DNA of 63,132 nucleotides, filler included, from Octopus bimaculoides (taxonomy: Eukaryota), in the NCBI RefSeq assembly GCF_001194135.2. It is 5 parts of 5 records of this genome, joined end to end, with 100 filler letters (N's around TTAATTAATTAA, not from the genome) between each part and the next. Parts side by side here need not be neighbours in the genome. Positions count along the whole stretch, not along the records: positions 36,780 to 51,370 come from NC_069010.1; 4 more parts are not named here. One strand, given 5' to 3'. Position numbers and translations under genes: made by a program. The notes under the pieces are model-generated. The model did no database searches. It saw nothing but the letters and a program-made list of their open reading frames with translations, and was not told the origin of the DNA. Positions 46,315 through 47,801 of this stretch are shown in pieces (the stretch's first letter is position 1; each line of letters begins with the position of its first letter).

Positions 46315-47650
46315 TACGCGATCCTTGGCGTAACCGTTTGACAATTCTTTGGCCCCGGCGTATACACACCAAATATGACATATAATTTCATATACACAAT
46401 AGTATCCTTATTGTAAAAGCTGTCAATTCCTTAAGATCGGTGGGTTTTTTTAATATTTATATATATACATACATACACACACACACACAAAATACAAGAT
46501 TATATATACATATATACATTGTGGGGGTGTCTCAACATTACCCCTAGTGTAAATGCAGGCTAGTTTCTCAGCCTATGGCGAGTATACATCATATATATAT
46601 ACATATATACACACACACATACAATATACGCACACGATCTAATATACAAACACAAGATGATATAGGCTCGTACCGAAAGATCGCCAGATAGTATATATAT
46701 GAATGTATGTTATCCATAATGGAAAGTGTTGGGTAATTCCTTAGCCCCCGGCATATCTACACAGCATGCAGAATATACAGATCGTACACAAAAATACAAG
46801 TATATACACAGTTTAATAACAGATATGTGTATATTTGTTACCCTCAGTGTAAAGTGATGAGAATTTGTTTAGCCCCCGGCTTGTCCAAGCTATACACAAA
46901 AAAATATACACACAATATACACACCATATAGAATATACAGATCGTATACAAATACAAGCTTATATTTATCTTTATATATAGATATATACACCGTATAACA
47001 CATATATTTATGTATAGACGTGATCGTTACTGTAAAATCCTGGGCAATGCTTTTAGCCCCCGGCGTGTATTAACCATACACATAAATATAATATATATAT
47101 ATATACAATATACACACCAGACAGAATATACAGATCGTACACAAATACAAGCTTATATAGATATATACACCGTATAACACGTATATTTATATATATACGT
47201 GATCGTTACTGTAAAATCCTGGGCAATGCTTTTAAGCCCCCGGCGTGTATTAACCATACACATAAATATAATATATANNNNNNNNNNCGTTACTGTAAAA
47301 TCCTGGGCAATGCTTTTAGCCCCCGGCGTGTATTAACCATACACATAAATATAATATATATATATATACAATATACACACCAGACAGAATATACAGATCG
47401 TACACAAATACAAGCTTATATAGATATATACACCGTATAACACGTATATTTATATATATACGTGATCGTTACTGTAAAATCCTGGGCAATGCTTTTAAGC
47501 CCCCGGCGTGTATTAACCATACACATAAATATAATATATATATATATATGTATATATACAATATACACACCAGACAGAATATACAGATCGTACACAAATA
47601 CAAGCTGATGTAGATATATACACGAAGAATAAATGATAGATATACGTTAC
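46315..47650 (-). repeat. Tandem array in PEDS1 intron 1 (near-identical ~179-bp units plus older diverged units)
   Basis: CGTTAC-anchored units at 47025, 47204, 47288 and 47467; diverged units near 46318, 46402, 46535, 46719 and 46837. The exon junction at 47645 is in register with them. Confidence 0.85.
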
Positions 47651-47801
47651 CCTTGGTGTAAAGGCTGGCCAATTCCTTGGCCCCAGCGTGCTGTGGTCCC
47701 CAACGAGGTTTCCGTTCCTTTTCGGCAAACAAACTGTTAGAGTTGGGGTCATCTTCTAACATAGAATAACGTAAAATCTGCTCCTCCGACTTTTCGCACA
47801 T
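47651..47801 (-). CDS. PEDS1: PEDS1/TMEM189 (plasmanylethanolamine desaturase, Kua) first coding exon: MCEKSEEQILRYSMLEDDPNSNSLFAEKERKPRWGPQHAGAKELASLYTK(G)
   Basis: Matches recalled TMEM189 RWGAQHAGARELAALYSPG and the invertebrate SMLEDDPN motif. ATG at 47801, phase-1 donor G|GTAACG at 47650. Confidence 0.93.

What the first reader, a model, noticed from the sequence alone, without database searches (positions are those of the whole stretch)
46315..47700. PEDS1 intron 1 begins with a tandem array built from the exon 1 3' end and its splice donor
Seen: the junction (plus strand CGTTACCCTTGGTGTAAAGGCTGGCCAATTCCTTGGCCCCAGCGTG) is homologous to the repeat unit (CGTTAC------TGTAAAATCCTGGGCAATGCTTTTAGCCCCCGGCGTG). 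It sits 178 bp from the last unit, matching the 179-bp period, so the true exon end is the terminal member of the array. Older units near 46318, 46402, 46535, 46719 and 46837 keep the same skeleton. On the minus strand several units retain a GT donor (ACA|GTAACG, GAGG|GTAACA, GGG|GTAATG), and the nearest still reads HAG..K.L. Inference: repeated local duplication created a ladder of decoy or alternative 5' splice sites. Using them would extend exon 1 into stop-containing sequence (likely NMD), which could tune plasmalogen desaturase output or vary in copy number between individuals. 47025-47277 and 47288-47540 are near-identical across a 10-N gap, so two of the four young units may be an assembly duplication.
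Basis: partly seen in the sequence, partly recalled or inferred. Interest (0 to 1): 0.75.

Follow-up and report, generated by a model that had tools for sequence, protein, structure and literature searches.

The report
Exon-junction minisatellite in PEDS1 intron 1
The first intron of this cephalopod's plasmalogen desaturase gene (PEDS1) opens with a real tandem array of decaying copies of the last 41 bases of exon 1 plus its splice donor; this kind of repeat is already known from human F7 and amphioxus genes, where such copies mostly do not disturb splicing, and here two of the youngest copies are probably an assembly duplicate.

Summary
The minus strand at 47801-47651 is PEDS1/TMEM189 exon 1, with donor AGG|GTAACG. 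The last 41 nt of the exon, the donor and about 135 nt of intron recur head-to-tail nine more times between 46316 and 47510. All copies are co-oriented, and no other copy occurs in the 14.6-kb piece (profile E 1e-7 to 1e-12; next hit E=7).

- **Assembly gap.** The 253 bases on each side of the 10-N gap at 47278 are identical. The other two 10-N gaps also carry exact suffix=prefix overlaps, and one is shown to be an uncollapsed overlap. Units C and D are therefore probably duplicates of A and B, leaving about seven pseudo-units plus the true junction.
- **Origin.** All units share one exon breakpoint and sit in a star-like pattern around the constrained exon. This fits one founding duplication followed by in-register amplification. 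Recent homogenisation stops 27 nt into the intron.
- **Relatives.** Five contigs with 94% identical exon 1 have no array.
- **Donors.** Pseudo-donors are weaker (ACA|GTAACG), equal (AGG|GTAACA) or dead (GT>AT), and are no better than chance GT sites in the spacers.

This is a new example of a known kind (human F7 IVS7, CBS, IFI6, LMNB2; amphioxus "mirages"). A regulatory decoy or NMD role is untested and unlikely.

The parts
47651..47801 (-). PEDS1 (TMEM189) exon 1 coding part, ATG at 47801, 151 nt, ends in phase 1 (…LYTKG)
   Evidence: Translation. It is 94% identical to P0001-P0003. tblastn with human PEDS1 (sequence recalled from memory) matches RWGxQHAGAxELAxLY. L002 carries the same exon 1 followed by PF10520 exons.
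47645..47653 (-). Authentic 5' splice site AGG|GTAACG (GT at 47650-47649)
   Evidence: Cross-species DNA homology stops at 47647. The exon 1/exon 2 structure is visible in L002. It matches the MAG|GTRAGT consensus at 6 of 9 positions.
47624..47690 (-). Old, unhomogenised part of the terminal (true) unit: 41 nt of exon, the donor and 27 nt of intron
   Evidence: About 70% identical to young units over this stretch. 63-74% identical to every pseudo-unit core.
47511..47623 (-). Distal spacer of the true unit, recently homogenised with the young units
   Evidence: Nearly identical to unit D/B apart from a 10-nt microsatellite indel and a few mismatches. TRF array 47288-47623. The repeat finder family D3.
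47331..47510 (-). Young unit D (core 47467-47510, pseudo-donor ACA|GTAACG with GT at 47472-47471); probably the same physical unit as B
47288..47330 (-). Young unit C core, starting exactly at a contig start; probably the same physical unit as A
   Evidence: 47288-47540 is identical to 47025-47277.
47278..47287 (.). 10-N assembly gap flanked by a 253-bp exact suffix=prefix overlap
   Evidence: By analogy with the gap at 38922, shown to be an uncollapsed overlap.
47068..47277 (-). Young unit B (core 47204-47247, TTTTAAG variant) plus the start of the next spacer up to the contig end
46884..47067 (-). Young unit A (core 47025-47067, TTTTAG variant)
   Evidence: A and B are 98% identical in the core and 81% over the whole unit.
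46755..46883 (-). Old unit o5, pseudo-donor AGG|GTAACA (GT at 46841-46840), as close to the consensus as the true donor
46582..46754 (-). Old unit o4, donor destroyed (GG|ATAACA)
46444..46581 (-). Old unit o3, pseudo-donor GGG|GTAATG (GT at 46541-46540)
46363..46443 (-). Old unit o2 (short), donor destroyed (AGG|ATACTA)
46180..46362 (-). Old unit o1 (core 46316-46362), the distal edge of the array. It is the unit most like the exon (74%). Donor destroyed (AGG|ATCGCG). It abuts a (TA)n run and a 10-N gap.

Best explanation
This is a lineage-specific minisatellite whose terminal monomer spans the exon 1/intron 1 boundary of PEDS1. It is the same kind of structure as amphioxus 'mirages' and the human F7 IVS7 VNTR.

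**Proposed history.** One tandem duplication of about 180 bp placed a second copy of the junction inside the intron. The duplicated segment held the last 41 nt of exon 1, the donor and about 135 nt of TA/CA-rich intron. In-register unequal exchange or replication slippage then amplified and turned over the unit. The exon copy stayed close to the ancestral sequence because it encodes the conserved QHAGAKELASLYT motif. The intronic copies decayed. A diverged unit next to the exon was recently re-amplified, and that homogenisation stops 27 nt inside the intron.

**Proposed consequence.** Transcripts are expected to use the first, cap-proximal authentic donor, so the copies are simply removed as intron and the array is neutral or nearly so. 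It is probably length-variable.

**Shown:** the anatomy, the direction of derivation, the single breakpoint, the absence in relatives and the likely assembly artefact. **Inferred:** the molecular mechanism of expansion, splicing behaviour, neutrality and polymorphism.
For: - **Array.** Ten co-oriented cores lie only in 46316-47690, and whole-unit homology includes the spacers.
- **Exon is the source.** The motif RWGPQHAGAKELA is conserved in many other hit proteins and in human PEDS1 (recalled sequence). Each pseudo-unit is closer to the exon (63-74%) than to most other units (49-67%). Nearly all pseudo-units keep the outgroup C at the Ala GCC codon, where the present exon has T.
- **Single founding event.** All units lose homology at the same exon position, upstream of CACGC.
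- **Lineage-specific.** L001 and L003-L006 (84% exon DNA identity) and L002 each show a single core hit at their own exon end and no array.
- **Concerted evolution excluding the edges.** A and B are 98% identical in the core. The distal spacer of the true unit is nearly identical to the young units, but its exon-proximal 68 nt is about 70% identical. The edge unit o1 is the one most like the exon.
- **Precedents.** Minisatellites spanning exon-intron boundaries, mostly with silent pseudo-sites, are described for F7, LMNB2, PDGF, CBS and IFI6 (PMC1557585) and for amphioxus Adh3, globin, TnC and PGBD5 (PMC3087553, PMC3902484). The amphioxus globin units are 150-160 bp and show the same edge exclusion from homogenisation.
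Against: - No RNA data exist here, so silence of the pseudo-donors is assumed, not shown. In IFI6 and CBS the two nearest pseudo-sites are used.
- The true donor is weak (no +5 G, 6 of 9 consensus positions), and o5 carries an equally good site.
- Copy number cannot be read from this assembly. Collapse or duplication of identical units is possible in either direction.
- At one site (TTG versus TTA, Leu) the states among units do not fit a simple tree.
- The relatives examined are fairly distant, so the age and taxonomic spread of the array are unknown.
Confidence: 0.8

Rival explanations
1. One reading: the array is a functional ladder of decoy or alternative 5' splice sites. Using them extends exon 1, triggers NMD and so tunes PEDS1 output, possibly depending on copy number.
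For: - Four pseudo-units as assembled-collapsed (A, B, o5, o3) keep GT, and o5 equals the true donor at positions -3 to +5.
- The true donor is weak.
- Use of the nearest pseudo-site would add 178 nt and shift the frame.
- IFI6 and CBS use their two nearest pseudo-sites (PMC1557585).
Against: - Young pseudo-donors lack the -1 G (5 of 9 consensus positions), and three old units lost GT.
- Spacer GT sites that arose by chance score as well or better, so the exon-derived sites are not special.
- Loss of GT in 3 of 5 old units fits neutral decay at about 30-40% divergence.
- In F7 even identical or stronger downstream pseudo-sites stay silent (PMC1557585), and amphioxus mirages do not disturb splicing (PMC3087553, PMC3902484).
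- The array is absent from relatives, so it is not a conserved regulator.
Confidence: 0.1
2. The whole array is an assembly artefact.
For: The contig break and the 253-bp duplicated flank at 47278-47287 lie inside the array.
Against: - Units o1-o5, A and B lie in one uninterrupted contig (46180-47277). Units C and D and the exon lie in another (47288-50072).
- The units are 49-74% diverged from each other, which assembly errors do not produce.
- Only C and D are suspect.
Confidence: 0.02
3. The repeat is a dispersed satellite or transposon-borne tandem repeat that resembles the exon end by chance, or that captured it elsewhere.
For: The piece is rich in SINEs and microsatellites. Whether the unit occurs elsewhere in the genome could not be tested.
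Against: - The similarity is far beyond shuffled controls.
- The array is in register and co-oriented with the exon, with 178/179-bp spacing continuing onto the true junction.
- Divergence is star-like around the exon.
- No copy occurs elsewhere in the 14.6-kb piece.
Confidence: 0.03
4. The copies serve another RNA-level role. Candidates are editing-complementary sequences for A-to-I editing of exon 1, an intronic non-coding RNA cluster, or a cluster of U1-binding sites.
For: No direct evidence. Cephalopods edit heavily (general knowledge), and the cores are the best-preserved part of the units.
Against: - All copies are direct, not inverted. The reverse-complement scan reaches at most 22, and the only inverted repeats are TA runs, so they cannot pair with the exon.
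- Rfam gives nothing near any gathering score, only low-complexity microRNA look-alikes.
- The array is absent in relatives.
Confidence: 0.05

Closest known systems
Human F7 IVS7 37-bp VNTR, and the similar minisatellites in IFI6 (6-16) intron 2, CBS IVS13, LMNB2 and PDGF intron 4 (PMC1557585)
   Same: A head-to-tail minisatellite whose first monomer spans an exon-intron boundary, so the splice donor is repeated in the intron. LMNB2 (100 bp) and PDGF (81 bp) have long monomers, as here.
   Different: The human units are near-identical and the pseudo-sites match the true site exactly. Here the unit is about 180 bp and contains 41 nt of exon (F7 has 4). Most units are old and decayed, and the pseudo-donors differ from the true one. 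Polymorphism and splicing behaviour are untested here.
Amphioxus 'mirages': Adh3, globins BflGb6/BflGb9, TnC, PGBD5 (PMC3087553, PMC3902484)
   Same: Minisatellite-like tandem duplications of exon/intron boundaries in an invertebrate. Globin units are 150-160 bp. They show concerted evolution inside the cluster with the edges excluded from homogenisation. Only some units keep their splice signals.
   Different: The host is a different phylum (a cephalopod) and a different gene. The amphioxus globin units are 81-100% identical, whereas here the units range from 98% down to about 50%. Allelic length variation is shown in amphioxus but not here.
Intron gain by tandem duplication of an AGGT-containing exon segment (PMC3265369, PMC4974935)
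   Same: A tandem duplication that includes splice-signal sequence and is tolerated because splicing removes the extra copy.
   Different: No new intron is created here. Intron 1 sits at the same position in all relatives. The duplication only lengthened the start of an existing intron.

Membership tests
Minisatellite spanning an exon-intron boundary ('mirage' / F7 IVS7 type) | Head-to-tail tandem array of a monomer of 10 to a few hundred bp | tested here: met
   TRF, the repeat finder and a MAFFT unit alignment show units of 81-184 bp with a 178/179-bp young period.
Minisatellite spanning an exon-intron boundary ('mirage' / F7 IVS7 type) | The terminal monomer contains the authentic exon end and splice site | tested here: met
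   The true junction aligns in register as the last unit. The exon boundary is fixed by cross-species homology.
Minisatellite spanning an exon-intron boundary ('mirage' / F7 IVS7 type) | The splice-site motif is repeated in the intronic monomers | tested here: met
   GT is kept in A, B (and C, D), o5 and o3, and lost in o1, o2 and o4. The repetition is partial, as in amphioxus.
Minisatellite spanning an exon-intron boundary ('mirage' / F7 IVS7 type) | Concerted evolution within the cluster, with the edges excluded | tested here: met
   A and B are 98% identical in the core. The distal spacer of the true unit is nearly identical to the young units, while its exon-proximal part is about 70%. The edge unit o1 is the one most like the exon.
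Minisatellite spanning an exon-intron boundary ('mirage' / F7 IVS7 type) | Length polymorphism between alleles or individuals | not testable with these tools
   Only one assembly is available. The contig break inside the array is only a hint.
Minisatellite spanning an exon-intron boundary ('mirage' / F7 IVS7 type) | Normal splicing uses the authentic (most upstream) donor | not testable with these tools
   No transcript data are available.
PEDS1 / TMEM189 (plasmanylethanolamine desaturase) | Orthologous exon 1 with the conserved RWGxQHAGAxELA motif | tested here: met
PEDS1 / TMEM189 (plasmanylethanolamine desaturase) | Lipid desaturase domain PF10520 with histidine motifs | tested here: inconclusive
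   The domain exons are not in the piece, because intron 1 exceeds 10.8 kb. In relative L002 the same exon 1 is followed by exons matching PF10520 at E 1e-33 and 9e-18.
Intron gain by tandem duplication (AGGT model) | The intron is absent at this position in relatives and was created between the two duplicated copies | tested here: not met
   The intron is present at the same position in L001-L006 and L002.
Editing-complementary sequence (ECS) for A-to-I editing | An inverted copy able to pair with the exon | tested here: not met
   All copies are direct. The best reverse-complement score is 22, at background level. The only inverted repeats are TA runs.

The most novel reading that the evidence does not exclude
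The array is a copy-number-variable VNTR. Its nearest pseudo-donors (ACA|GTAACG at +178, and the equally strong AGG|GTAACA of o5) compete measurably with an unusually weak authentic donor (AGG|GTAACG, no +5 G). Repeat number would then set the fraction of frame-shifted, NMD-targeted PEDS1 transcripts, and so plasmalogen synthesis, in this cephalopod.
Probability: 0.08. Interest if true: 0.5.

Novelty: new member of a known kind. Interest (0 to 1): 0.27.

Why it matters
The array shows that minisatellites spanning an exon-intron boundary, described in humans and amphioxus, also arise in cephalopods. I found no report of one in cephalopods in the searchable literature.

The old units act as fossils of the exon, preserving an ancestral synonymous state. 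The sharp stop of homogenisation 27 nt into the intron marks how far selection on the exon, the donor and the proximal intron reaches.

There are two practical points. Gene predictors could mis-place the exon 1 donor here. In this assembly, 10-N gaps mark uncollapsed contig overlaps, so apparent duplications across them should not be trusted.

None of this bears on PEDS1 function unless the pseudo-donors are shown to be used.

Tried and rejected
1. **Same species elsewhere.** I looked up the window's own 110-aa read-through ORF in the public gene-position index, to find other assemblies of the same species that would resolve the gap. It is not on record.
2. **Conserved intron sequence.** blastn of the piece against L001-L006 found only exon 1 and microsatellites. 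The array therefore could not be placed relative to an ancestral intron sequence.
3. **Exon 2.** It is not in the piece, so I could not check where a premature stop would fall after a +178-nt extension.
4. **Rfam.** The E-value-mode scan of 45000-49600 returned only sub-threshold hits to mir-297, mir-466 and similar families in TG/TA microsatellites. I reject these as low-complexity matches.
5. **Editing-complementary-sequence idea.** Rejected, because there are no inverted copies.
6. **Neighbouring gene.** I searched the piece upstream of exon 1 for the GTP1_OBG neighbour seen head-to-head with PEDS1 in L002. Nothing beyond low-complexity hits was found.
7. **Selection against decoy donors.** GT>AT is shared by o1, o2 and o4. 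I considered selection, but the numbers are too small and fit neutral decay. Other characters group o4 with GT-bearing o5, A and B, so at least two independent hits are implied.
8. **Donor scoring.** I did not use a quantitative splice-site score (MaxEnt or Shapiro-Senapathy), because no octopod matrix is available. Only consensus and U1-match counts are given.

Full report
**1. What the locus is**

The piece (36780-51370) carries, on the minus strand, an ORF starting at 47801: MCEKSEEQILRYSMLEDDPNSNSLFAEKERKPRWGPQHAGAKELASLYTKG. It is followed by GTAACG.

A search of the 5.8-billion-protein collection returned 59 short ORF products sharing the RWGPQHAGAKELA motif. Three were 94% identical, and some were named 'ubiquitin-conjugating enzyme E2 variant' by JGI, the old Kua-UEV/TMEM189 naming.

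One relative, L002 (69% DNA identity in exon 1), holds the whole gene. Its exon 1 is followed by exons that hit Pfam PF10520 (Lipid_desat) at E 1.4e-33 and 8.6e-18. TMEM189 is PEDS1, the plasmanylethanolamine desaturase (PMC9131029).

In L002 the hit to exon 1 ends at ...TKGK and the next exon begins GKR. In L001 and L003-L006 DNA homology to the window stops at 47647, inside the donor. So 47651 is the last exon base, and the donor is AGG|GTAACG.

Exon 2 is not in the piece, so intron 1 is longer than 10.8 kb. The species cannot be named with these tools. The SINE-like repeats resemble octopus SINEs as I recall them.

47025-47277 and 47288-47540 are identical at 253 of 253 positions. This is exactly the last 253 bases of the left contig and the first 253 of the right contig.

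I checked every gap in the piece:

| Gap | Length | Exact suffix=prefix overlap |
|---|---|---|
| 38922-38931 | 10 N | 32 bp |
| 46170-46179 | 10 N | 29 bp, (TA)n |
| 47278-47287 | 10 N | 253 bp |
| 37607-37685 | 79 N | 9 bp |
| 44635-45070 | 436 N | 18 bp, (TA)n |
| 39076-39175, 39470-40162, 50073-50728 | 100-693 N | none |

The 38922 gap lies in a SINE. Two other SINE copies in the piece align colinearly to the overlap-collapsed version and only partially to the sequence as assembled. So 10-N gaps in this assembly mark contig ends that overlap but were not merged.

Units C and D are therefore most probably units A and B counted twice; I put this at about 75%. A short-read assembly can equally collapse identical units, so the true copy number is open in both directions. 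Reading frame across the gap is irrelevant, because the gap is intronic.

**3. The observation**

- A local-alignment scan of the 46-nt junction against both strands of the piece gives nine non-self hits scoring 31-46. All are in the same orientation and within 46323-47510. The best hit anywhere else scores 22.
- Of 300 dinucleotide-shuffled queries, the best score averaged 23.7 (sd 2.5), and 1% reached 31.
- A profile of the core finds the ten sites at E 1e-7 to 1.3e-12; the next hit has E=7.
- Homology covers the whole unit, spacers included.
- The young period is 179 bp, and the true junction sits 178 bp from unit D.

The array is real and is not chance.

**4. Anatomy and history**

*Breakpoint.* All units lose homology to the exon at the same point, 41 nt before the exon end, upstream of CACGC. 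One founding duplication followed by in-register amplification explains this. Repeated independent duplications of the exon would not.

*Direction of derivation.* The identity matrix is star-like. Every pseudo-unit core is 63-74% identical to the exon junction but only 49-67% identical to most other units. The exceptions are A/B at 98% and o4/o5 at 73%. This is expected if the exon, held by selection on QHAGAKELASLYT, is close to the ancestor and the copies decay independently. Nearly all pseudo-units also keep C at the Ala GCC codon, as in the outgroups, where today's exon has T. The copies are fossils of an earlier exon.

*Lineage specificity.* The copies share CTT (Leu) with the window's exon, against CTC in the outgroups. 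The profile finds one hit per relative, at its own exon end. No array appears in 10 kb of L001 intron, nor in L003-L006 or L002. The array arose after the split from those fairly distant relatives.

*Homogenisation boundary.* The true unit is chimeric. Its exon, donor and first 27 nt of intron (47624-47690) are about 70% identical to unit D. The rest of its spacer (47511-47623) is nearly identical to unit D, apart from a 10-nt microsatellite indel and a few mismatches. Recent amplification or conversion reached up to, but not into, the exon-proximal part. The distal edge unit o1 is the one most like the exon (74%). Edge units escaping homogenisation is the pattern reported for amphioxus mirages (PMC3087553).

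**5. The pseudo-donors**

| Site | Sequence | Match to MAG\|GTRAGT |
|---|---|---|
| True donor | AGG\|GTAACG | 6 of 9 |
| Young units A-D | ACA\|GTAACG | 5 of 9 (no -1 G) |
| o5 | AGG\|GTAACA | 6 of 9 |
| o3 | GGG\|GTAATG | 5 of 9 |
| o1, o2, o4 | GT changed to AT | dead |

The five closest relatives (L001, L003-L006) have CTG|GTAAGC (7 of 9 by the same count), and most other hits read G-K across the junction (GGTAAR). The window's lineage has therefore lost the +5 G, and did so before the array expanded.

In the first 1.2 kb of the collapsed intron, 4 GT sites match at 7 of 9 and 17 at 6 of 9. One is CTG|GTGTGT, 80 nt after the true donor. The exon-derived sites do not stand out.

Using the nearest pseudo-site would add 178 nt. 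That extension has no in-frame stop; the TAA at codon 111 is part of the pseudo-donor's GTAA. It shifts the frame by +1. All more distal sites lie beyond that stop.

**6. What it most likely is**

It is a minisatellite of the type that spans an exon-intron boundary. It was seeded by one junction-spanning tandem duplication in a microsatellite-rich intron, expanded by unequal exchange or slippage, and is tolerated because the upstream authentic donor is used.

The structure and its history are shown. Silence of the pseudo-donors, neutrality and polymorphism are inferred from precedent:

- In F7, up to eight identical pseudo-sites stay silent, and even stronger ones do not compete.
- LMNB2 (100-bp unit) and PDGF (81-bp unit) also use only the authentic site.
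- IFI6 and CBS do use the two nearest pseudo-sites (PMC1557585).
- Amphioxus mirages do not disturb splicing (PMC3087553, PMC3902484).

**7. Rivals**

- *A regulatory decoy ladder with NMD* is possible but unsupported (see section 5).
- *A whole-array artefact* is excluded, because seven diverged units lie in one uninterrupted contig.
- *A dispersed repeat resembling the exon by chance* is excluded by the statistics, the register and the star-like pattern, although a genome-wide search was not possible.
- *Editing-complementary sequences* are excluded by orientation.
- *A known RNA family* is excluded by Rfam.
- *Intron gain by duplication* does not apply, because the intron pre-exists in all relatives.

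**8. Novelty and verdict**

This is a new example of a known kind. I found no report of such an array in cephalopods in the searchable library. The finding is solid as an observation, modest in interest, and carries a useful caveat about this assembly's 10-N gaps.

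Noticed in passing
window 38922-38931 and 46170-46179 (also 37607-37685 and 44635-45070): Every 10-N gap in the piece is flanked by an exact suffix=prefix overlap of the two contigs (32 bp and 29 bp at these two). 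The 79-N gap has a 9-bp overlap and the 436-N gap an 18-bp (TA)n overlap. The 38922 case is shown to be an uncollapsed overlap by comparison with two other SINE copies. Sequence duplicated across such gaps is not genomic.
   Followed up: yes
window 38830-39020, about 38681-38788, 49215-49511: There are several copies of a tRNA-related SINE-like repeat (GGTTCCRGGTTCAGTCCCACTGCGTGGCACCTTGGGCAAGTGTC...). Two heads lie in tandem, as a 100-bp unit repeated 1.9 times, at 49287-49473.
   Followed up: partly
window 43626-43703: A perfect 38-bp unit repeated 2.1 times (GTTGCCCCAGCATGGCCGCAGTCTAATGACTGAAACAA). It looks like a duplicated SINE tail.
   Followed up: no
window 47645-47650 versus L001 5871-5876 and L003-L006: The authentic donor here is GTAACG, whereas the closest relatives have GTAAGC and most other relatives read GGTAAR. 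The +5 G has been lost in this lineage, and the pseudo-units share the change (GTAAC). The donor was therefore already weak when the array formed.
   Followed up: partly
window 47469-47801 (minus strand): The exon 1 reading frame stays open for 110 codons through the whole first intronic unit. It ends at a TAA that is part of the first pseudo-donor's GTAA. Prokaryote-style ORF callers would report a 110-aa product here.
   Followed up: yes
window 45150-46030: About 60 sub-threshold Rfam matches to mir-297, mir-466, mir-3149 and mir-1277 fall in TG/TA/CA microsatellite sequence on both strands. All are far below gathering scores and are low-complexity look-alikes, not microRNA genes.
   Followed up: yes
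window 47809-48270: Immediately upstream of the PEDS1 start codon lies a dense patch of short repeats: (ACC)n, (TGTTGG)n, (GTCT)n, (TGG)n and (AG)n. It is presumably the 5'UTR or promoter region. No relative of the GTP1_OBG gene, which sits head-to-head with PEDS1 in L002, was found up to 51370.
   Followed up: partly
L001 15814-15881: The relative's contig ends in a reverse-transcriptase (PF00078) ORF about 10 kb into PEDS1 intron 1. This points to a retroelement insertion in that species' intron.
   Followed up: no
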